From positions 372,001 to 436,000 of IMG/VR virus record IMGVR_UViG_3300046660_000488: a stretch of DNA of 64,000 nucleotides; one strand, given 5' to 3'. Shown piece after piece: positions 12,276 through 45,192 of the stretch. Made by a program: the position numbers and the translations under genes. Within the stretch, counting starts at the first letter, position 1. Each line of letters starts with the position of its first letter. The notes beneath the pieces are model-generated. The model was not told the DNA's origin. It worked only from the letters and a program-made list of their open reading frames with translations, and searched no databases.

Positions 12276-14555
12276 TTACACGTTGATAACCACGTTGTCA
12301 TCAACAATCGCGATGTTCGCATCGCCGCCGTTTTCCAGAGAACCGATCACGATCAACTTGGAAAGAGGCTTGGCGACATTGTCGGACAGGACGCGCTTGA
12401 GCGGTCGAGCGCCCATGAGCGGGTCGTAGCCCTTGTCGCCCAGCCAGTCCAAGGCCTCTTGCGTGAACGACAGATTGACGTTTCGCAGGGAGGCCATTTC
12501 CTGAAGCTGGCGAACGAACTTGGCCACGATGTGCAGCATGTTCGCCTTGTCCAGCCTGTCGAAGCGGATGTGGGCGTCCAGACGGTTCATGAACTCCGGG
12601 GTGAAGAACGCCTTGATCGCGGCGGTATCGCCGCCGACGTTCTCTTGCGATCCGAAACCGATCCGGTTCTTGGCCCGATCACGCGCCCCGGCATTCGAGG
12701 TCATGATCAGATGGATGTACCGGCAGTCGATGGTCTTGTTCGACGAGTCGGTGAACGAACCATTGTCCATGATCTGGAGGAAGATGTTCAGGACGTCCGG
12801 GTGAGCTTTCTCGATCTCATCCAGCAGCACCACGCAATGAGGCGTGTCGCTGACGCTCTGGGACAGCAGGCCAGCCTGATCCGAGTAGCCGACATAGCCG
12901 GGAGGGGCGCCGATCAGCCTGCTGACCGTGTGCTTCTCCATGTACTCGGACATGTCGATCCGGATGAGAGGCAGGTTGTAGACGTCCGCGAAGACCTTGG
13001 TGACTTCGGTCTTACCCACGCCGGTCGGGCCGGTGAACAGGTAGGCTCCAGCCGTCTTGTGGTTCTCACGCAGGCCAGCCTTGCTCAGGTAGATCGCGTC
13101 GATCAGGGCGGTGATCGCCGCTTCCTGCCCGAAGACGTTGGCGCGCATCTGCTCGTCGAGACGGATGATGCGTTCCTTGTCGCCCTCGGCCATTTTCTTC
13201 GGCGGGATTTTGGCGATCTGCTCAACTTCGGCCTCGATCTCTTCGACCGTGATCAGACCCTTGCGCTCGACACCTTCCTTCAGGACGTTCTGGGACGCGC
13301 CAGCGCAGTCGATCAGGTCGATGGCCTTGTCGGGCAGGAGCTTGCCGCTGATGTAACGGTGCGACAGGTCAACGGCCGCCACGAGGGCTTCGTCCGTGAA
13401 TTCGACGTTGTGGAAGGTCGAGTAATAGGGCGCGAGGCCGCGCAGGATGTCCTTGGCGTCGTCCAGCGACGGTTCGAACACATCCACCTTGCCGAATCGG
13501 CGAACGAGTGCCGTGTCCTTCTCGAAGTGCTTGTGGAACTCTGACGACGTCGTCGAGCCCATGCAGCGCAGCGTGCCCTTGGCCAGAGCAGGCTTCAGGA
13601 GGTTGGCCGCGTCCATCGTGCCGCTGTTGCCAGCCCCGGCGCCCATGATCATATGGATTTCGTCGATGAACAGGATCGACTTGGGCTTCAGTTCAAGGGC
13701 GTTGATGACTTGCTTCATCCGCTCTTCGAAATCACCGCGATAGCGAGCGCCAGCCACCAGAGCGGCCAGATCAAGCGCATAGACGGTCGAGTCCAGCAGG
13801 ATGGCCGGAACCTCGGAGCGAACGATCTTCAGGGCCAGACCTTCGGCGATGGCCGTCTTGCCAACACCCGGTTCACCCACCAGCAGCGGGTTGTTCTTCG
13901 TCCGGCGGGCGAGGATTTTGACGACGGAGTCCACTTCCTTCGTCCGGCCGATCAGCGGGTCGATGCTCTTGGTGTTGGCCCGCTCATTCAGGTTGACCGT
14001 GTAAAGCGCCAGAATGGAGTCGGCATCAGCTTCGGTCGTCGGCTTGGGCGGCGCCGTGGTCGGCTCGTCACCAGACATGATATGGCGTGCAAGACCGATG
14101 GTCGGCTTCTTGCCGTGCGACATGAAGCGCATCAGGGCCAGCGGATCGACGCCGAACTTTTGCAGGATCACGACCGCGTAACTGTCCTCCATCTTGGAGC
14201 CAGCCAGTTGCAGCAGGACATCCAGAGGGGTGACGTCAGGATCGGTGTGGGCGGCCTTCTTGCCGGTCGCGTTGAACACCAGTTCATTGGCGCGCGGGCT
14301 CGGCTCCGGCTCTTCGTCGCTGGCAGGAATGAGGCCTTCGGAGTAGAACGACTCCAACTCTTCCTGAATGCCCTCGACGTCGATCTTCATCCCTTCAAGG
14401 GCGGAGACCACATCTTCCTGCTCCAGAAGCGACGACAGCAGGTGTTCGAGGGTGATGAAAGCATGTCTGCGTTCGGTGGCGATTCGTCTAGCCCGAAGAA
14501 ACATCGCGGCTGTACGCTCAGTTTGAGCGCTATTCTCAGGCAAATCACTCATCAA
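12276..14555 (-). CDS. clpA: ATP-dependent Clp protease ATP-binding subunit ClpA
   Basis: Two AAA+ modules ([16 protein letters not shown]), [12 protein letters not shown], an IGF ClpP-docking loop and no ClpB middle domain. Confidence 0.95.
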
Positions 14556-14562
14556 AAATACC

Positions 14563-15057
14563 TTATCTACGCAATGTCTTACCTCCCGATCCTTTGGCCC
14601 TCGATAATACGAGGCGGGAGACGAGAGACACGAACGTCACCCCGTTCAGGTGGTCCGTCTCATGAAGGTAGCAGCGTGCGTCGAGATTGGCAAACATTTC
14701 GTTTACCAAATTTCCGGCCGCGTCCTGATAGCGCACCTCGGCGGTGATCGGCCGGGATACCTTCAGGAAAAGGCCGGGGAAGCTCAGGCAACCCTCATCA
14801 TCCTTGGCCTTGGTCTCGGAGACCGACAGGATTTCCGGGTTGAAGACGCCGATCTGGCGGCCGTCGCTCGTCTCCATGACGAACATGCGGTAGGGCAGGT
14901 TGACTTGCGGAGCGGCCAGACCGATGCCGCGCTCGCGCTTCATCGTAGACAGCATTTCGCCCACCAACCATTTCGGGTCGGCGGGCGGATTTTCGAAGTC
15001 GAAGGGAGGGGTGGGCTCCGACAGGATGGGGTGTGAATCGGGTACGAGGGTGAACAT
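14563..15057 (-). CDS. def: peptide deformylase
   Basis: GIGLAAPQV, EGCLSFP, HETDHLNG. Confidence 0.96.
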   Translation of the reverse strand: MFTLVPDSHPILSEPTPPFDFENPPADPKWLVGEMLSTMKRERGIGLAAPQVNLPYRMFVMETSDGRQIGVFNPEILSVSETKAKDDEGCLSFPGLFLKVSRPITAEVRYQDAAGNLVNEMFANLDARCYLHETDHLNGVTFVSLVSRLVLSRAKGSGGKTLRR

Positions 15058-15683
15058 TACAGTCTGGAGCGGATGATCTCGTGCATGACTTCGATCCCAG
15101 CGACCTTCAGGTCGTTGCAGGCTTTGGCGTCGCCCATCGAGACGATGTCGCGAAGCGAGGCGTGGATCAAGTAGGTTTCGGTGAACATCAGGCCGCGAAC
15201 CTGCGAAGCCCGCTCGTAGGAGATCATCCCCGGCGCCGTGCCCTCGCGGACAGTGATGTTGTGGCCAAGGCGGCTCATTTCGATGCCGAAGTCGCGGTTG
15301 GCCTTGATGCAGGCCTCTTGGTTGACCGGCGCGCCACGGTTCACAGCGCCACGACCCAGTTCACCGGCCTTGATCCTGTTGGAGACGTTGGCACACAATT
15401 GGGTCACGCAGCGGCTGTTGACGGCCGAGCCGACGATCTGAGCCATCTGGCTGAGGTCTTGAACGTTGGGGTCGAGGCCCTGATAGGTCGGCGAGACATA
15501 GCGCGTCTGGCCGTTGGCCATGCGCTGCTGATATTGATACTGCGGATACGGACGATCCTGCTGGCGGGTCTGCGGGCCATTGACGGCCGCCACCGCGTCG
15601 CGGGTCACGCTTGGATCGAACTGCTGGGCGTTCGCGCTCGAAGCGAACAGGACAGCGGCGATAGCAAGACCGGCGAGACGCAA
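15057..15683 (-). CDS. secreted/periplasmic hypothetical protein
   Basis: Signal peptide MRLAGLAIAAVLFASSANA; GGAGG RBS. Confidence 0.7.
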   Translation of the reverse strand: MRLAGLAIAAVLFASSANAQQFDPSVTRDAVAAVNGPQTRQQDRPYPQYQYQQRMANGQTRYVSPTYQGLDPNVQDLSQMAQIVGSAVNSRCVTQLCANVSNRIKAGELGRGAVNRGAPVNQEACIKANRDFGIEMSRLGHNITVREGTAPGMISYERASQVRGLMFTETYLIHASLRDIVSMGDAKACNDLKVAGIEVMHEIIRSRL

Positions 15684-15711
15684 GGTGACCTCCAGAGCAA
15701 TTTCGATTTGG

Positions 15712-16596
15712 CTACGTAGCAGAGTTTTGCTTCTCTTGCAAGTCTTTTACTTGCAAAAGCAGGCCTTTTTGCTCGTCCGTCAAGTCCTTGGGGACCGTGA
15801 TGTTGATGACCGCAAAGAGATCACCACGCTCACCACCGCGCTCAAGGTCCGGCAGACCGTAGCCGCTGATCCTCACCGACGACCCTGACACCTTGGTCGG
15901 AACGCCGAAATAAAGCTCTTCGCCCTCCAGCGTCACGATCTTGGCCGCGCCGCTGATCATCAGTTCAAGGGCATCCACGTCAACGCGGGCATGCAGGTTC
16001 GCGCCGTTGCGCTCGAACGCACGATGCGGCTTGACCCTTACCGTCAGGTAAAGGTCTCCAGCCTTGCCGCTCACCCAGTTCCCCATGCCCGGAACACGCA
16101 GCCGCGTACCGTGGTGAATGCCCGGTGGGATTTTCACGTTCAGGGTCTTGGCCGTTTCGAGGCCGGGATCGACCTCGATGTTCACGTTGGCCCCATTCAG
16201 TACCGAAATCAGGTCGATATCGACGGCGGCTTGCCGGTCCATCATCTGGCGACGGATGTGTTCGTCTTGGCGCCTGAAAATTTCCCGATAGCGATCCGCG
16301 AACGGGTTGTTGTCGTCGAACGCGAATTCCTGCCACCAGCCGCCCGCCGCGTCGGCGTTGCGGAAACCGTTCGGGCCATGCGGGTTCTGGCTGAAAGGGC
16401 TCGACGCCTGCTTCCACTCATTGCGCTTGGCCTGCGTGGCGATTTTCTCGTAAGCGGCTGAAATCTCTTTGAAACGAGCGTCGTCACCCCCGTTGCGATC
16501 CGGGTGATGTTCCTTGGCCAGCTTGCGGTAGGCCGACTTGATCTCGTCGTCGGTGGCGGTCTCTGCGACGCCAAGGGTGGTGAAGGGATTGCTCAT
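15712..16596 (-). CDS. dnaJ: DnaJ/CbpA-type J-domain chaperone without a Zn finger
   Basis: J-domain with HPD and a DnaJ C-terminal domain (GDLYL, GDLFA). Confidence 0.9.
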   Translation of the reverse strand: MSNPFTTLGVAETATDDEIKSAYRKLAKEHHPDRNGGDDARFKEISAAYEKIATQAKRNEWKQASSPFSQNPHGPNGFRNADAAGGWWQEFAFDDNNPFADRYREIFRRQDEHIRRQMMDRQAAVDIDLISVLNGANVNIEVDPGLETAKTLNVKIPPGIHHGTRLRVPGMGNWVSGKAGDLYLTVRVKPHRAFERNGANLHARVDVDALELMISGAAKIVTLEGEELYFGVPTKVSGSSVRISGYGLPDLERGGERGDLFAVINITVPKDLTDEQKGLLLQVKDLQEKQNSAT

Positions 16597-16672
16597 TAAC
16601 GAAATTATAACCCAATGGTAAGCCTAAAGCAGTAAAATCCAGCTTTAAGGCCAAGTATTTAGGGCCATCCCA

Positions 16673-16700
16673 TTGACATTGCGGGAATCTATAGTAGGAT
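16673..16700 (+). promoter_or_regulatory. sigma70-type promoter, back to back with a minus-strand late motif at 16656-16661
   Basis: TTGACA-16-TAGGAT. Confidence 0.6.
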
Positions 16701-16731
16701 TACTTTGTTGAAACGGTAGGAGACAGCACAC

Positions 16732-17157
16732 ATGACGAAACTGGTAAAACGGTTGGCCATCGACGCCCTGCTCGCCTACCTGTTCTATCGGTTCAGCCGC
16801 GTGGTGTTCGTCGTCGTCCTGTTTTTCGCGGCCATCTTTGGCTATGGCGTGATCAGTAGCGCGTGGTCTGATTTCCGCGCCCATGGCGGCGGCGAGCAAA
16901 TCGACCCTGCAACGGCCGCTTCATTCAGCTACAACACCGACGTCAACAACAGCCAAGTGAACTGGACCTTCCGCAACACGTCGGATCGCGTTTTGGGTTC
17001 GGTCGAGATTGCATGCGTGGCCAATGGCACGGAGACCCTGTTCTTGGCGGGCGACTATGTCGCTCCGGGCCAAGAGGTCAGCGGCGCCAAATACAACTCG
17101 ACCTTCGGCTATGACACGCGGTGTCACCTCGCCGATGCGAGACTGTACGACAAGTGA
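16732..17157 (+). CDS. membrane-anchored hypothetical protein
   Basis: AGGAG RBS, hydrophobic N-terminus, beta-rich C-terminal domain. Confidence 0.7.
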   Translation: MTKLVKRLAIDALLAYLFYRFSRVVFVVVLFFAAIFGYGVISSAWSDFRAHGGGEQIDPATAASFSYNTDVNNSQVNWTFRNTSDRVLGSVEIACVANGTETLFLAGDYVAPGQEVSGAKYNSTFGYDTRCHLADARLYDK

Positions 17158-17160
17158 CTG

Positions 17161-17860
17161 ATCAGGCGGGCTTGCCCGCCTGATGGTTTGGATGACACAC
17201 TCGCTATCGCTCGCTGGCTGTCATCCAAACCGATTTGACTGTCCTTCCTTGAGACAGTTTCTTTCCTTGTATCCTAGATTTATGTTGCATTTCTCTCCCC
17301 CTACCACAAGCAATCCCCCGTAAAGGGGGACTGACTTGCGGTAAAGGGAGAAGTGCAGACGATCCTGAGTTCGTAGTTGCTCAACCCGTGGCGTACCGCG
17401 TCTATAGCGGGGCTGGCGGTTCTCCTGTACCAGCTTGTTGCACACGTTATCTCGATCCGACCCACCTGAAGGTGGTCGAGTTGCGTCTTGACCGGTGGAT
17501 GTGCCTTTCGGCGCTTTCATCCCCGAGACGTGCTTGACGGGTGGTCGTGTGTGATCTGAACGGTTATGGCTCCCTCTCGGGGCCAATCTTACAGACCTCG
17601 CCGGTTGAGAGACGGGTCCGCACGGATAGTTGTCAAACGCGAGACATAGCTATCCTCTTTCATAAAAAGCCTTTCGTGGACCAAATTCTGGTTCACCAAG
17701 CGGCTGTGACGGGATATGCTCGCCGTGGGGCTTTCACCCGCGTGGCAATCCGACCTACTTGTTCGGTGCGCTCCTGACGTTCCGGTCCGTTGATCCCGGT
17801 TGGTCGGTTGGGCTGGGCTACCCGATACTTACTGCCCTGCGCGTATAGCTGTAAGTTGGA
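17161..17860 (+). ncRNA. candidate large structured non-coding RNA (or structured origin region)
   Basis: No credible ORF; at least ten hairpins and a multibranch junction; G.U pairs consistently on the + strand. Confidence 0.55.
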
Positions 17861-17877
17861 CAATAGAATCATAACGT

Positions 17878-18318
17878 GTGCTGAGTCAAAATGAATCGGT
17901 GGTTGCATTGAACTTAGATGTTTGGCGGTTCCAAGATGACCGGCTGGTCATGGTGCTGACGCCGATCAATTCGGACGGCGGCAATGATCGTGCGATTTAC
18001 ACGCCGGGCACTCCAGAATCCGAAGCGTTCAAGTTGCTGCGCGATGACACGATGTCGAAAAGGCATACCATCCTCTTGGTGGCCGACTGCATCGTTGAGG
18101 GTATTTTCAAGTTCAGTCTTTTCAAGACGGTGGCGCCATGGACGCCGGACGCGGACGTCAGGCTGCGCGAGAATTCGATCCTGACCGAATTCTTCGAAAG
18201 ATGCCCGGCGACCCGCATGGAGAAAATGCAGCACGTTCCGGGTGTTGACGCTTCGACTGAATTGAACATCTACATCCGGATAGAAGACCTGATGTTCCTG
18301 CGGATGATGTACTCATGA
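17878..18318 (+). CDS. paralogue family protein 1
   Basis: ENSILTEFFERCPATR...YIRIEDLMFLRMMYS. Confidence 0.75.
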   Translation: MLSQNESVVALNLDVWRFQDDRLVMVLTPINSDGGNDRAIYTPGTPESEAFKLLRDDTMSKRHTILLVADCIVEGIFKFSLFKTVAPWTPDADVRLRENSILTEFFERCPATRMEKMQHVPGVDASTELNIYIRIEDLMFLRMMYS

Positions 18319-32956: not shown

Positions 32957-33238
32957 ATGGATTATCAGTCCATGGCAATCGGACTTATCACAATTTGGCT
33001 GGGTGTGGCGGCGTGGCTTTGGGTCCACTGCAAGCTGACGCTCGACGACGCCGAAAATGTGGAAGATGTCCCCCAGCGCTCAATTCCCGGTGCGCTGCTG
33101 TGGCCGTGGTTCTTTTTGATTTCATTGACCAATTTTTTCATCACGTGGTCTTCGGCCCTCGTGAACCATTTCAAGGCGAAGCTATATGACGAACACGGTG
33201 CAGATCATCGAAGCCCTCGAAGCGACGACGAAACGTAA
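32957..33238 (+). CDS. small membrane protein
   Basis: Two hydrophobic segments with ALLWPWF. Confidence 0.55.
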   Translation: MDYQSMAIGLITIWLGVAAWLWVHCKLTLDDAENVEDVPQRSIPGALLWPWFFLISLTNFFITWSSALVNHFKAKLYDEHGADHRSPRSDDET

Positions 33239-34568
33239 CGAGAAGGAACAAATCCTCACCGCCGCATTTATGGATGGTGAACGAGATTTTTTCACTGCTG
33301 CAAAACTGGCATACGACATTCTGGTCACCTTCGGCGTCAAGAAGGTCGCCGAGATCGATCCGGAAGCTGAAGACGTAGGCGGCGACTATTCGTTCGTGGA
33401 TTTCCTGTCGCTGGCCGCCAAGTTGCGCGCCCGTGAACTGACGGGTCACGCGGCGCGCGACGCGATCCACGAGGCCGCCAACCGCAGCAACGTGAAGACG
33501 TGGAACACGTTCTACCGCCGCATCCTGCTGAAGGATTTCAAGTGCGGCGTGGACACCTCCACGATCAACAAGGTGCTCAAGGCCATCGCCAAGAGCACGC
33601 ACCTCGCGGAAGCGTCCGACTTCATCATCCCGGTGTTCTCGTGCCAGTTGGCCAAGGACGGCGCCGATCCGGACAACGCCAAGCACGTGACCGGCCGCAA
33701 GATGCTGGACATCAAGCTGGACGGCGTCCGTCTGCTGACCGTGCTCGACAAAGAGCAGGGCACGATCACCCAGTACACCCGCAACGGCAAGGTCAACGAG
33801 AATTTCACGGAAATCCGTGAGAGCCTTCAGGCCATGATGGACTACCTGCCGGGCTCGGTGGTTATCGACGGTGAAGTCGTCGCCAAGTCGTTCCAAGACC
33901 TGATGCGTCACGTCAACCGTCGCACGGATGTGGACACGTCTGCCGCCCGGCTGGCCGTGTTCGACATGATCCCGCTGGAAGACTTCCGCGCGGGCATCTG
34001 CACGACGCCGCAGGAAATCCGCCACACGGTTCTGGCCGATCTGGACGCCGAAGGCTTGTTCAAGAAATTCACCAACGGCATCGTCTACGTGATCCCCAAG
34101 GTGACCGTCGATCTGGACACGGTCGAGGGCCAAAAGACCTACGCCGAGTTCAACAAGGCCGCCATCGAAGCGGGCTACGAGGGCGTGATGCTGAAGGACC
34201 CGGACGCGCCGTACGAGACGCGCCGCACCAAGGCGTGGCTGAAGGTCAAGCCGTTCATCGAAGTCAGCCTAACCGTGGTTGGCGTCGAGGTCGGCAAGGA
34301 AGACGGCAAGCGCAAGGGCCTGCTGGGCGCCATCGTCTGTGAGGGCTACGACGACGGCAAGTTCATCAAGTCCAATGTCGGGAGCGGATTCACCGATGCT
34401 CAGGTCAAGGAATACTGGGAAGACCAGTCCTTGGTCATGGGCATGGTGGTCGAGATTCGCGCCGACTGTCTGACCCAAGACGAGGACAGCACCGGCACGA
34501 ACAATTACTCGCTGCGGTTCCCGCGATTCAAGGGCTTCCGGGGTACGGTTCCGGGTGAAAAGCTCTAA
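33186..34568 (+). CDS. lig: ATP-dependent DNA ligase
   Basis: KLDGVR, DGEV, EGVMLK, WLKVKP, SLRFPRF. Confidence 0.95.
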   Translation: MTNTVQIIEALEATTKRNEKEQILTAAFMDGERDFFTAAKLAYDILVTFGVKKVAEIDPEAEDVGGDYSFVDFLSLAAKLRARELTGHAARDAIHEAANRSNVKTWNTFYRRILLKDFKCGVDTSTINKVLKAIAKSTHLAEASDFIIPVFSCQLAKDGADPDNAKHVTGRKMLDIKLDGVRLLTVLDKEQGTITQYTRNGKVNENFTEIRESLQAMMDYLPGSVVIDGEVVAKSFQDLMRHVNRRTDVDTSAARLAVFDMIPLEDFRAGICTTPQEIRHTVLADLDAEGLFKKFTNGIVYVIPKVTVDLDTVEGQKTYAEFNKAAIEAGYEGVMLKDPDAPYETRRTKAWLKVKPFIEVSLTVVGVEVGKEDGKRKGLLGAIVCEGYDDGKFIKSNVGSGFTDAQVKEYWEDQSLVMGMVVEIRADCLTQDEDSTGTNNYSLRFPRFKGFRGTVPGEKL

Positions 34569-44400: not shown

Positions 44401-44695
44401 AGGGGGAGCTTTCTGTTGACAGGCAAGCCCCGAAGGACCGGCTCCCTAACCCCGGAACCATCACCGCTTACGCGGCGACAGCGTAGTCCATGGCAACGTT
44501 GTCGTTGGCATTTACAATTGTGAACTGATCGTCGGCCGTGTCTTGCCGGATATCTCGCAAACCCTTTACCGCCGCGAATCGATGCTGGTCACCCCCACTT
44601 AGAAACCCATCGCGGACGATGGGCTTGTATGGTGGAGGTGCGGGGAATCGCACCCCGGTCTTCATCGGCTTATTACAGTCTGGTCATCAATATCG
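44401..44695 (-). ncRNA. ssrA: circularly permuted (two-piece) tmRNA with tag ANDNVAMDYAVAA
   Basis: Acceptor piece ends CCGGGG-TGCGATT-CCCCG-CACCTCCACCA at 44630; 33-nt intervening hairpin; coding piece starts GGGGGTGA at 44596; G3.U70 pair; tag stop at 44468. Confidence 0.93.
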
Positions 44696-44730
44696 TCTGT
44701 ATTTAAGCATGGTTTACCAAATGGCACAAG

Positions 44731-45192
44731 CTAAATCGAATTCTCGTCCATTTTGGTGATCCGCTTGGCGGCCAAGGACTTTTTGCGTTCCTTTTCCGAC
44801 TGGTGCGCGCGGTACACAATGCACGGACCCATCCAGCCATATGGCCCCACGAACAGTGCGGTGATCAGCCACCAGTCTTGGTTTTTAACGAACCACGGGA
44901 TGTGGTGCGTGACCGTCAGCATGCCCAGCGTACCGAAGAACACGAGCAGCAGAAAAGTCGGGCCGAACGTGATGATCTCAGACCTGATCCACCGGCGCCG
45001 AGCATCTTGTTCGTCCGGGGTCACCAGCAGACCAAGCTCGTCTTCCAGCATGGCCTGTCGTTCGGCCATCGCGCAGACCTTCTTGAACCAGTGGCGGTCG
45101 TTGATGCCAATGGGGCACGGTCCGGTCTCCGGCGTCCACGAGACGAAATCGGCGACGATCTTCTGAGCCCGGTCGGCCACCACGGGTTTCAT
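44731..45192 (-). CDS. membrane protein
   Basis: Two hydrophobic segments; ATGA overlap with serS. Confidence 0.65.
   Translation of the reverse strand: MKPVVADRAQKIVADFVSWTPETGPCPIGINDRHWFKKVCAMAERQAMLEDELGLLVTPDEQDARRRWIRSEIITFGPTFLLLVFFGTLGMLTVTHHIPWFVKNQDWWLITALFVGPYGWMGPCIVYRAHQSEKERKKSLAAKRITKMDENSI

What the first reader, a model, noticed from the sequence alone, without database searches (positions are those of the whole stretch)
17161..17860. Candidate ~700-nt structured non-coding RNA of unknown class
Seen in sequence: this is the only long region without a credible ORF in a tightly packed genome, and it is tiled with helices. These include 17161-17184; a 13-bp stem at 17185-17197/17219-17231; 17237-17259; a long interrupted hairpin at 17286-17357 capped by CCCCC-GTAAA-GGGGG; and a multibranch domain closed by CACACG 17441/CGTGTG 17546 that contains CGACCCACC-TGAA-GGTGGTCG and GCGTCTTG/CGAGACGT. 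Further stems are GGCTCC/GGGGCC, GGATAGT/GCTATCC and GTGGACCA/TGGTTCAC. In at least six stems the non-Watson-Crick pair is G.U on the + strand and would be an A.C mismatch on the - strand. Inference: selection acts on a + strand single-stranded nucleic acid, probably read through from the 16673 promoter because the first hairpin has no U-tract. I could not recognise RNase P, group I/II intron or hammerhead cores. It may be a new large phage ncRNA, comparable in size to GOLLD or ROOL, or a structured replication origin.
Basis: partly seen in the sequence, partly recalled or inferred. Interest (0 to 1): 0.88.

Follow-up and report, generated by a model that had tools for sequence, protein, structure and literature searches.

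The report
New large structured RNA, minus strand
The ORF-free stretch is a real gene for a roughly 690-nt, heavily folded non-coding RNA of a family that is not in Rfam, most likely read from the opposite strand to the one proposed; it has four diverged copies in this 578-kb phage and relatives in other huge phages and in mobile islands of soil Alphaproteobacteria.

Summary
Window 17161-17860 has no credible ORF and folds far better than shuffled sequence on both strands (z about -9 to -10).

It is not unique. The 578-kb phage carries four copies that are 47-60% identical. Homologues occur in at least four related huge phages, in other viral contigs and in seven alphaproteobacterial genomes. 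There they lie in mobile regions. In three loci the RNA sits directly downstream of, and co-oriented with, a tyrosine integrase.

Identity across the family is only 45-64%, yet helices are kept by compensatory changes (13/14 and 9/14 predicted pairs in two blocks). Two pseudoknots are conserved (18/18 and 18/19 sequences). No Rfam 15 family matches any member.

Five lines favour the minus strand:
- excess folding energy (9/9 copies);
- GNRA/UUCG tetraloops (7 versus 1);
- a conserved TTGAC-N17-CTAY promoter like the phage's tRNA promoters;
- gene context;
- a modest G.U excess.

I found no sign of an origin (no GC-skew signal, no iterons) or of coding.

Function is unknown. My best guess is a stable trans-acting scaffold or catalytic RNA of mobile elements, in the manner of GOLLD and ROOL. 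No transcript data could be obtained.

The parts
17861..17889 (-). Promoter of the RNA gene: -35 TTGACT (17889-17884), 17-nt spacer, -10 CTATTG (17866-17861). The scan tool reads the same site as TTGACT-N18-TATTGT.
   Evidence: Found by the consensus scan. TTGAC/TCGAC, the 17-nt spacing and CTA/CGA are kept in the phage copies. The architecture matches TTGACG-N17-CTAAAT in front of the phage's tRNA arrays. That it works as a promoter is inferred, not shown.
17161..17853 (-). Predicted transcribed RNA, about 690 nt. The 5' end is inferred at about 17853 (6-8 nt after the -10). The 3' end is inferred at the terminal hairpin.
   Evidence: nhmmer homology of the paralogues covers window 17158-17893. 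The ends are not mapped experimentally.
17810..17837 (-). Pseudoknot PK1 near the 5' end: S1 GGGC (17837-17834) with GCCC (17818-17815); S2 GGGU (17823-17820) with GCCC (17813-17810).
   Evidence: The same architecture occurs in 18 of 18 homologues, with many different stem sequences; 28% of shuffled windows give any such pseudoknot (alignment A4).
17660..17809 (-). Variable 5' domain with several hairpins, including GUGAACC/GGUCCAC at 17676-17704, and the conserved CGAAAGGC linker.
   Evidence: Homologous hairpins have different sequences in the 19-sequence alignment. The alignment here is less certain.
17624..17655 (-). Helix Pa: GGAUAG...CUAUCC with an inner helix and the conserved UUUGAC loop.
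   Evidence: 5 of 6 outer pairs show compensatory changes in 19 sequences.
17588..17623 (-). Helix Pb, with the conserved loop YUCYUCRA.
   Evidence: Every pair covaries, for example UA:10/CG:9 and GC:7/AU:6/GU:4/UA:2.
17558..17585 (-). Hairpin Pc (17568-17585), the conserved motif CAUAACCGU (17568-17560), whose AACCG core is invariant and which is complete in most copies, and the 5' strand of pseudoknot PK2 (GUUC, 17561-17558).
   Evidence: Alignments A3 and A5; PK2 table.
17435..17557 (-). Multibranch domain, the optional module.
   Evidence: 19 of 37 pairs are compensatory in 6 sequences. The domain is missing from three homologues and is capped by a GAAA tetraloop in G005.
17412..17434 (-). 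Conserved hairpin GCUGG-loop-CCAGC. Its loop segment GAAC (17422-17419) pairs with 17561-17558 to form PK2.
   Evidence: The stem covaries (UA:11, AU:5). PK2 is compatible in 18 of 19 sequences, with five Watson-Crick types at its fourth pair.
17286..17357 (-). Long hairpin P2, with a conserved base (UCUCCC / GGGGGAGA) and a hypervariable tip.
   Evidence: It is a continuous 18+9-bp hairpin on the minus strand but is interrupted on the plus strand. The tips of homologues are capped by UUCG or GCAA in minus-strand reading.
17275..17285 (-). Conserved, apparently unpaired motif UAAAUCUAGG.
   Evidence: Nearly invariant in the phage copies and recognisable in the bacterial copies.
17185..17231 (-). 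3' hairpin (13-bp stem) whose loop carries the conserved motif GAGCGNNAGCGAG (17212-17200).
   Evidence: Perfect inverted repeat. The loop motif is conserved across the family and is duplicated in Chthonobacter.
17161..17184 (-). Terminal GC-rich hairpin, a putative 3' end or terminator without a U-tract.
   Evidence: Perfect 11-bp inverted repeat. Homologues have an equivalent hairpin of different sequence. Its role as a terminator is inferred.

Best explanation
Window 17161-17889 is a self-contained gene for a highly structured non-coding RNA of about 690 nt, most likely transcribed from the minus strand.

Shown:
- It belongs to a family of at least 19 sequenced members. Four are diverged paralogues in this 578-kb phage. 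Others are in related huge phages, in other viral contigs and in seven alphaproteobacterial genomes.
- Primary sequence has drifted to 45-64% identity while the fold is kept. The fold has more than a dozen helices, two pseudoknots, an optional multibranch module and a hairpin with a variable tip.
- No family in Rfam 15 matches it.

Inferred:
- Host RNA polymerase starts at a sigma-70-type promoter (TTGACT-N17-CTATTG, 17889-17861).
- The transcript runs leftwards to the terminal hairpins at 17231-17161.
- The RNA acts in trans as a stable folded molecule, either as a scaffold for proteins or as an RNA-only or catalytic assembly.
- It serves mobile elements rather than the cell. This would explain why it travels with phages and integrase-bearing islands, and why the phage keeps several old paralogues.

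Its biochemical activity is unknown.
For: Family:
- nhmmer finds three further full-length copies in the genome, with E from 1e-19 to 8e-33 for a single-sequence query and 7.5e-50 for the fourth copy with a profile.
- A covariance model and nhmmer find two copies each in G001 and G002 and one in G005.
- A pattern scan followed by nhmmer finds five more viral loci (from four distinct copies, since L132 and L142 carry the same sequence) and eight bacterial loci from seven species, with E down to 3e-52.

Structure:
- 19/37 pairs are compensatory in 6 sequences.
- 13/14 and 9/14 predicted pairs are compensatory in 18-19 sequences.
- PK1 is present in 18/18 sequences and PK2 is compatible in 18/19.
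- Identities are 45-64%.
- One copy replaces a whole domain with a GAAA-capped stem.

Strand:
- Excess stability over shuffles is larger on the minus strand in 9/9 copies.
- GNRA/UNCG tetraloops on Watson-Crick stems number 7 on the minus strand and 1 on the plus strand.
- The consensus folding energy is -119.8 versus -109.5. In pairs predicted on both strands, G.U counts are 79 versus 50, and 14 of 19 sequences lean to the minus strand.
- One covarying pair reads GU:11/CG:5/GC:2 in minus-strand orientation.
- The fifth pair of PK1 stem 2 alternates between U-A and U.G.
- The conserved promoter is of the same type as the tRNA promoters.
- Two paralogues are followed by a co-oriented gene with its own promoter.
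- In three bacterial loci the RNA is co-oriented with the upstream integrase.

Not a known family: no Rfam match.

Not coding: stops in all frames and no Pfam match.
Against: - No transcript evidence exists. No RNA run was listed for this sequence, so expression, strand and ends are all inferred.
- G.U versus A.C counts restricted to covarying pairs are nearly balanced (52 versus 45).
- The + strand also folds with z -9.7.
- The 3' hairpins lack U-tracts.
- Clear promoters are not evident upstream of several bacterial copies.
- The functional statement (trans-acting scaffold or catalyst) rests only on analogy.
- The literature search was limited, so the family may be described somewhere outside Rfam.
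Confidence: 0.65

Rival explanations
1. The RNA is real but is made from the plus strand. It would be read through from the upstream gene (promoter at 16673), or from an unrecognised plus-strand promoter in the copies whose upstream gene is divergent.
For: The plus strand folds with z -9.7. Some helices carry G.U pairs in plus-strand reading, for example columns 72-125 and 73-124 of A2. Two of the four phage copies follow a co-oriented gene. G.U counts in covarying pairs are close to even.
Against: - All 9 copies have more excess stability on the minus strand.
- Stable tetraloops favour the minus strand 7 to 1.
- The conserved TTGAC-N17-CTAY block makes sense only on the minus strand.
- Two paralogues have a divergent gene only about 55 nt from the element's left end, which leaves no room for a plus-strand promoter.
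- G.U-rich covarying helices read correctly only on the minus strand.
Confidence: 0.13
2. The active form is DNA rather than RNA. The element would be a structured single-stranded DNA site or a selfish repeat used by mobile elements, such as a replication origin, a recombination or packaging site, or a 'mobile/repeat sequence candidate'. This would explain multiple copies per genome and the association with integrases and resolvases.
For: There are four copies in the phage. In bacteria the element lies next to tyrosine integrases and near resolvases. Watson-Crick covariation alone does not distinguish RNA from single-stranded DNA. The Breaker-lab category of such elements is defined by exactly these associations (PMC11109978).
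Against: - The copies are 47-60% identical, not near-identical as in active repeats.
- There are no terminal inverted repeats or iterons.
- There is no GC-skew feature at any copy.
- The phage has no tyrosine or serine recombinase.
- A conserved promoter is part of the unit.
- RNA-typical GNRA and UUCG loops, conserved G.U pairs and pseudoknots are present.
- Each bacterial genome has a single copy.
Confidence: 0.1
3. It is a very long structured leader or cis-regulatory RNA for the gene that follows it on the minus strand.
For: In two paralogues a co-oriented gene follows the 3' end.
Against: In the window copy the next gene on that side (16732-17157) is on the opposite strand. Flanking proteins share no homology among the four phage copies and belong to no common functional class. 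Two paralogues have a separate promoter between the element and the next gene.
Confidence: 0.03
4. It is a decayed or recoded protein-coding gene.
For: One plus-strand frame has only TGA stops (5), and the phage carries suppressor-like tRNA(CUA) genes.
Against: The suppressors would read TAG, not TGA. Neighbouring genes end in TGA. Every frame has at least five stops. The mechanical ORFs have no Pfam match. Indels between copies are not in multiples of three, and substitutions are compensatory across helices.
Confidence: 0.01

Closest known systems
GOLLD and ROOL RNAs (large ornate RNAs of phages and prophages)
   Same: They are similar in size (about 600-800 nt), intricately folded with pseudoknots and optional modules, carried by phages and prophages, expressed as stand-alone genes, and of unknown function. 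The cryo-EM work on them (bioRxiv 10.1101/2024.12.08.627333, listed) shows RNA-only multimeric assemblies, which is the mode of action I consider most plausible here.
   Different: There is no sequence or structure homology: their Rfam models give no match even at E<=10. The hosts differ: Alphaproteobacteria and their huge phages here, as against Firmicutes, rumen and lake organisms (from general knowledge). GOLLD and ROOL usually lie beside tRNA genes (from general knowledge), whereas these copies do not. This family has multiple old paralogues per genome.
OLE and raiA RNAs (large bacterial non-coding RNAs)
   Same: They are large, conserved, structured stand-alone RNAs whose discovery rested on covariation.
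   Different: No Rfam match. Those are chromosomal genes of Firmicutes and Actinobacteria with fixed gene neighbours (from general knowledge). This family is sporadic: it was found in 1 of 151 genomes of one order and is borne by mobile elements.
HEARO / omega RNA, IS110 bridge RNA and other recombinase- or nuclease-associated guide RNAs
   Same: They are structured RNAs encoded next to a mobile-element enzyme. In three bacterial loci this RNA lies directly downstream of an integrase.
   Different: The adjacent integrases are not homologous to one another at E<=1e-4. The phage has four RNA copies and no tyrosine or serine recombinase. The RNA is three to four times larger than known guide RNAs (sizes from general knowledge). 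I found no guide-like segment and did not test for one systematically.
Mobile/repeat sequence candidates (MRSC) of the Breaker-lab surveys
   Same: They show several copies per genome and an association with integrases (PMC11109978).
   Different: The copies here are strongly diverged, have a conserved promoter and RNA-type tertiary motifs, and are single-copy in bacteria.
RNase P RNA, group I and group II introns, tmRNA
   Same: They are large RNAs rich in pseudoknots, and some are found in phages.
   Different: No Rfam match for any of them. The element is intergenic, not inserted in a gene. A separate bona fide tmRNA is present at 44402-44738.

Membership tests
GOLLD, ROOL, OLE, raiA and HEARO (Rfam covariance models) | A match to the family's covariance model at or near its gathering score. 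| tested here: not met
   cmscan of the whole window at gathering score gave only the tmRNA. cmscan of 16600-18100 at E<=10 gave only hairpin-type miRNA noise and two E>1 chance hits. Twelve homologous loci gave only tRNAs.
RNase P RNA, group I intron, group II intron | A match to the Rfam models (conserved catalytic cores); for introns, insertion in a host gene. | tested here: not met
   No match at E<=10. The element lies between genes and has its own promoter.
Structured non-coding RNA (generic) | Helices maintained by compensatory substitutions across diverged homologues. | tested here: met
   19/37, 13/14 and 9/14 predicted pairs carry double changes, at 45-64% sequence identity.
Structured non-coding RNA (generic) | A discrete transcript from the predicted strand. 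| not testable with these tools
   No RNA sequencing run holding the sequence was listed.
Structured non-coding RNA (generic) | Folding better than shuffled sequence, with strand asymmetry. | tested here: met
   z is -9.7 and -9.0. The excess over shuffles is greater on the minus strand in 9/9 copies.
Replication origin | A GC-skew inflection, iterons or DnaA boxes, and an AT-rich unwinding element. | tested here: not met
   Cumulative skew shows no feature at any of the four copies. No direct-repeat arrays are present. GC content is 54-57%, slightly below the flanking genes, with no AT-rich block. DnaA boxes were not searched for specifically.
Transposable repeat or MITE-like element | Near-identical copies, terminal inverted repeats and target-site duplications. 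| tested here: not met
   The copies are 47-60% identical. No terminal inverted repeats are present. Target-site duplications were not examined.
Protein-coding gene | An open frame conserved among homologues and a family match. | tested here: not met
   There are 5-14 stops in every frame, no Pfam hit, and frame-breaking indels among the copies.

The most novel reading that the evidence does not exclude
This is a previously undescribed class of large ornate RNA, with about 600-750 nt, two pseudoknots and modular domains. It is shared by half-megabase soil phages and by integrase-bearing islands of Alphaproteobacteria, and it has been kept as several ancient paralogues in the phages. It would act as a ribozyme or a self-assembling RNA or RNP machine in the conflicts or life cycle of mobile elements.
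Probability: 0.45. Interest if true: 0.88.

Novelty: new member of a known kind. Interest (0 to 1): 0.8.

Why it matters
Very few classes of large, elaborately folded bacterial or phage RNA are known (RNase P, the self-splicing introns, tmRNA, OLE, GOLLD, ROOL, raiA, HEARO). Each has either revealed new biochemistry or remains a prominent open problem. A new family of this size would add a strong candidate for an unknown RNA-based function. Its assets are clear covariation, two pseudoknots, modular architecture and multiple old paralogues in a 578-kb phage. It is also unusually tractable. Homologues sit in cultured strains: Microvirga sp. VF16, M. lupini Lut6, Azospirillum brasilense HAMBI_3172, Methylobacterium variabile DSM 16961 and Chthonobacter rhizosphaerae. 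Expression, knock-outs, probing and cryo-EM are therefore possible without culturing the phage. The shared presence in huge phages and chromosomal islands also points to exchange or conflict between these elements.

Tried and rejected
- Three early DNA-pattern scans gave only chance hits or none. The hits were rejected with an nhmmer profile (two scans of viral contigs and one of metagenome contigs).
- A 23-nt degenerate pattern returned 53 viral and more than 120 genomic loci. Most were chance matches in GC-rich genomes. Only 15 loci (including the two known G001 copies) passed nhmmer at E<=1e-3.
- G.U versus A.C counting on 9 sequences was inconclusive.
- A brute-force search for covarying column pairs was swamped by low-complexity matches.
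- A pseudoknot loop-length argument for the strand gave opposite answers depending on the stacking assumed. I do not use it as evidence.
- Shared flanking proteins: none among the four phage copies, and no common functional class.
- tRNA adjacency, as seen for GOLLD and ROOL: not found.
- GC skew as a sign of an origin: flat.
- Iterons or terminal repeats: none.
- Recoded coding gene: rejected.
- Integration target for islands: rejected. The integrase lies 5' of the RNA, and in one locus the island sits at a tRNA.
- RNA-guided recombinase idea: weakened, because the phage has no integrase or resolvase.
- RNA-seq evidence: no run was listed.
- Literature searches found no description of this family.

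Full report
**Where the window lies.** The window is bases 372001-436000 of a 578,292-bp virus record with direct terminal repeats. The neighbours of the finding are ClpB-like, peptide deformylase and DnaJ genes on the minus strand, and small genes of unknown function on the plus strand. ARAGORN finds 69 tRNA genes in the genome. The window also holds a permuted alpha-type tmRNA, which points to an alphaproteobacterial host. The DNA comes from a rhizosphere metagenome.

**Checking the observation.**
- The stretch 17161-17860 has 5-14 stop codons in each of the six frames.
- The two mechanical minus-strand ORFs in it have no Pfam match.
17161-17184 and 17185-17197/17219-17231 are perfect inverted repeats. 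The long hairpin and the multibranch domain appear in the minimum-energy folds.
- Both strands fold far better than dinucleotide shuffles: z -9.7 for the plus strand and -9.0 for the minus strand.
- Rfam 15 has no match at gathering score. At E<=10 it returns only hairpin-like miRNA noise.

Three of its claims are not, as shown below: that the region is unique, the G.U argument, and the read-through promoter.

**It is a family, not a single locus.**
- nhmmer with the region as query finds two more full-length copies in the same genome. A profile then finds a fourth. The copies are at genome 96.9 kb, 218 kb, 389 kb (the window) and 539 kb.
- Their flanking proteins share no homology and belong to no common functional class.
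- Relatives of the phage were collected through its terminase. DNA search, nhmmer and a covariance model of the 158-nt core (R1) found two copies each in a 415-kb and a 608-kb phage, and one shorter copy in a 500-kb phage. R1 found none in the other 23 related records, including the 500-kb phage, whose shorter copy lacks this core.
- A degenerate 23-nt pattern scan, filtered with the profile, added five viral loci (from four distinct copies, since L132 and L142 carry the same sequence) and eight bacterial loci from seven species. The species are three Microvirga, Azospirillum brasilense, Chthonobacter rhizosphaerae, Methylobacterium variabile and two Caulobacteraceae MAGs.
- None of these loci matches an Rfam family apart from nearby tRNAs.
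- Pairwise identity over the core is 45-64%, apart from one 84% pair. The window copy groups with one copy of the 415-kb phage and its near-identical viral-contig relative L114 (support 0.985). The paralogues are therefore older than the split between these phages.

**The fold is conserved by compensation.**
- With six sequences, 19 of 37 predicted pairs of the multibranch core show double changes.
- With 18-19 sequences, 13 of 14 pairs in the Pa/Pb block and 9 of 14 in the next block do so. Examples are UA:10/CG:9 and GC:7/AU:6/GU:4/UA:2.
- A pseudoknot near the 5' end (PK1) is found with the same order and spacing in 18 of 18 sequences, with at least a dozen different stem sequences. Only 28% of shuffled windows yield any such pseudoknot.
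- A second, long-range pseudoknot (PK2) joins GUYN after the conserved CAUAACCGU to NRAC in the loop of the GCUGG/CCAGC hairpin. It is compatible in 18 of 19 sequences, with five Watson-Crick combinations at its fourth pair.
- The multibranch domain is optional. Three members lack it, and in one a GAAA-capped stem stands in its place.
- The tip of the long hairpin P2 varies freely in length and sequence.

This is the pattern of a functional folded RNA. It is not the pattern of a coding gene or of a protein-binding DNA site.

**Which strand?** Watson-Crick covariation cannot tell the strands apart, so I used asymmetric signals.
1. In all nine phage copies, the excess of native stability over shuffles is larger on the minus strand, by 2-19 kcal/mol.
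2. Among four-base loops closed by at least 4 Watson-Crick pairs, seven are GNRA or UNCG in minus-strand reading and one in plus-strand reading. At homologous positions the loops are UUCG, GCAA, GAAA and GCGA.
3. The right end of every phage copy carries TTGAC (or TCGAC), then a 17-nt spacer, then CTA (or CGA) in most copies, on the minus strand. The phage's tRNA arrays are preceded by TTGACG-N17-CTAAAT. From general knowledge, this is the alphaproteobacterial sigma-70 pattern.
4. In two paralogues the left end is only about 55 nt from the start of a gene that points away from the element and has its own promoter. This fits terminator, then promoter, then gene on the minus strand. It leaves no room for a plus-strand promoter.
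5. With 19 sequences, consensus folding gives -119.8 for the minus strand against -109.5 for the plus strand. Pairs predicted on both strands hold 79 G.U in minus-strand reading against 50 in plus-strand reading. Fourteen of 19 sequences lean to the minus strand. One covarying pair reads GU:11/CG:5/GC:2. The last pair of PK1 stem 2 alternates between U-A and U.G.
6. In three bacterial loci the RNA, in this orientation, directly follows a co-oriented integrase gene.

Two results point the other way. Counts restricted to covarying pairs are nearly even (52 versus 45). Earlier counts on nine sequences were balanced. I put the minus strand at about 0.8.

**Genomic setting in bacteria.**
- In Microvirga sp. 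VF16, a 329-aa tyrosine integrase ends about 140 nt before the RNA. An ABC-3C defence module follows the RNA.
- In Microvirga sp. 2MCAF38, an integrase-like gene precedes the RNA and a resolvase follows it.
- In a Caulobacteraceae MAG the order is tRNA, integrase, RNA, as at the edge of an island integrated at a tRNA.
- Resolvase genes also lie near the Azospirillum and Chthonobacter copies.
- Each of the five bacterial genomes searched with model R1 has one copy.
- Only the query genome matched among 151 genomes of its order, and this search had limited sensitivity.

The RNA is thus cargo of mobile elements rather than a core bacterial gene. It is not an integration target, because the integrase lies on its 5' side. 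The phage has no tyrosine or serine recombinase, so the RNA does not depend on one.

**Alternatives.**
- Origin of replication. Cumulative GC skew has no feature at any copy. There are no iterons or terminal repeats. GC content is 54-57%, slightly below the flanking genes, with no AT-rich block.
- Selfish DNA repeat. The copies are too diverged and lack terminal repeats. The unit also includes a promoter and RNA-type loops. Even so, a role as single-stranded DNA cannot be excluded without transcript data.
- Leader of a downstream gene. The neighbours are not consistent.
- Coding or recoded gene. This is excluded by the stops, the frame-breaking indels and the compensatory pattern.

**How it probably works.**
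- Shown: a conserved, modular fold with two pseudoknots, and carriage by phages and islands.
- Inferred: transcription by host polymerase from its own promoter, giving a stable RNA of about 690 nt that ends at two hairpins. One hairpin displays the conserved loop GAGCGNNAGCGAG. The conserved unpaired motifs (CAUAACCGU, UAAAUCUAGG, ACGAACUCAGG) are candidate contact or active sites.
- By analogy with GOLLD and ROOL, I consider a trans-acting RNA-only or RNP assembly (or a ribozyme) that serves the mobile element to be the most likely mode. I give that specific reading roughly 0.3-0.4. Nothing here identifies the activity.

**Novelty and verdict.** The family is absent from Rfam 15, and my literature searches did not find it. 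These searches were limited, so a prior description elsewhere cannot be ruled out. It is a new family within the known, small and much-studied category of large structured RNAs of bacteria and phages. The strand, the promoter and the claim of uniqueness are wrong. Interest is high, because cultured carriers make the question directly testable.

Noticed in passing
window 44402-44738 (-): A two-piece (permuted) alphaproteobacterial-type tmRNA gene is encoded by the phage (Rfam RF01849 at 114 bits, RF04321 at 121.7 bits).
   Followed up: no
genome 109999-110155 (-), outside the window: Two adjacent tRNA genes with anticodon CUA (amber-suppressor-like) are among the 69 tRNA genes that ARAGORN finds in the phage genome. 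This may indicate TAG read-through or recoding in part of the genome.
   Followed up: no
genome about 123290 and about 262180, outside the window: tRNA arrays are preceded by TTGACG-N17-CTAAAT, an alphaproteobacterial sigma-70-type promoter. I used this as a reference for the RNA's own promoter.
   Followed up: partly
window 17440-17450 and 17871-17881: A perfect 11-nt inverted repeat links the multibranch domain to the promoter spacer of the RNA gene. It is specific to this copy and would be expected by chance about 0.1 times. Its meaning is unknown.
   Followed up: no
genome 125803-126552 and 355699-356394, outside the window: A crude ORF map leaves these other ORF-free gaps of about 700-750 nt. 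They are not homologous to this RNA and could hold other non-coding elements.
   Followed up: no
L173:1708-4681 (Microvirga sp. VF16): An ABC-3C-type defence module (DUF2326 and CTD10 proteins) lies immediately beyond the bacterial copy of the RNA, convergent with it.
   Followed up: partly
window 12276-16596 (-): A chaperone and protein-maturation cluster in the phage: a ClpB/ClpA-like AAA+ protein, peptide deformylase and DnaJ.
   Followed up: partly
window 33186-34568 (+) and the window's right end (L008:1285-2880): An ATP-dependent DNA ligase, and the large terminase subunit, which crosses the end of the window. The terminase has 467 relatives in IMG/VR. The closest are at 53-75% identity, and many come from contigs of 200-600 kb.
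   Followed up: partly
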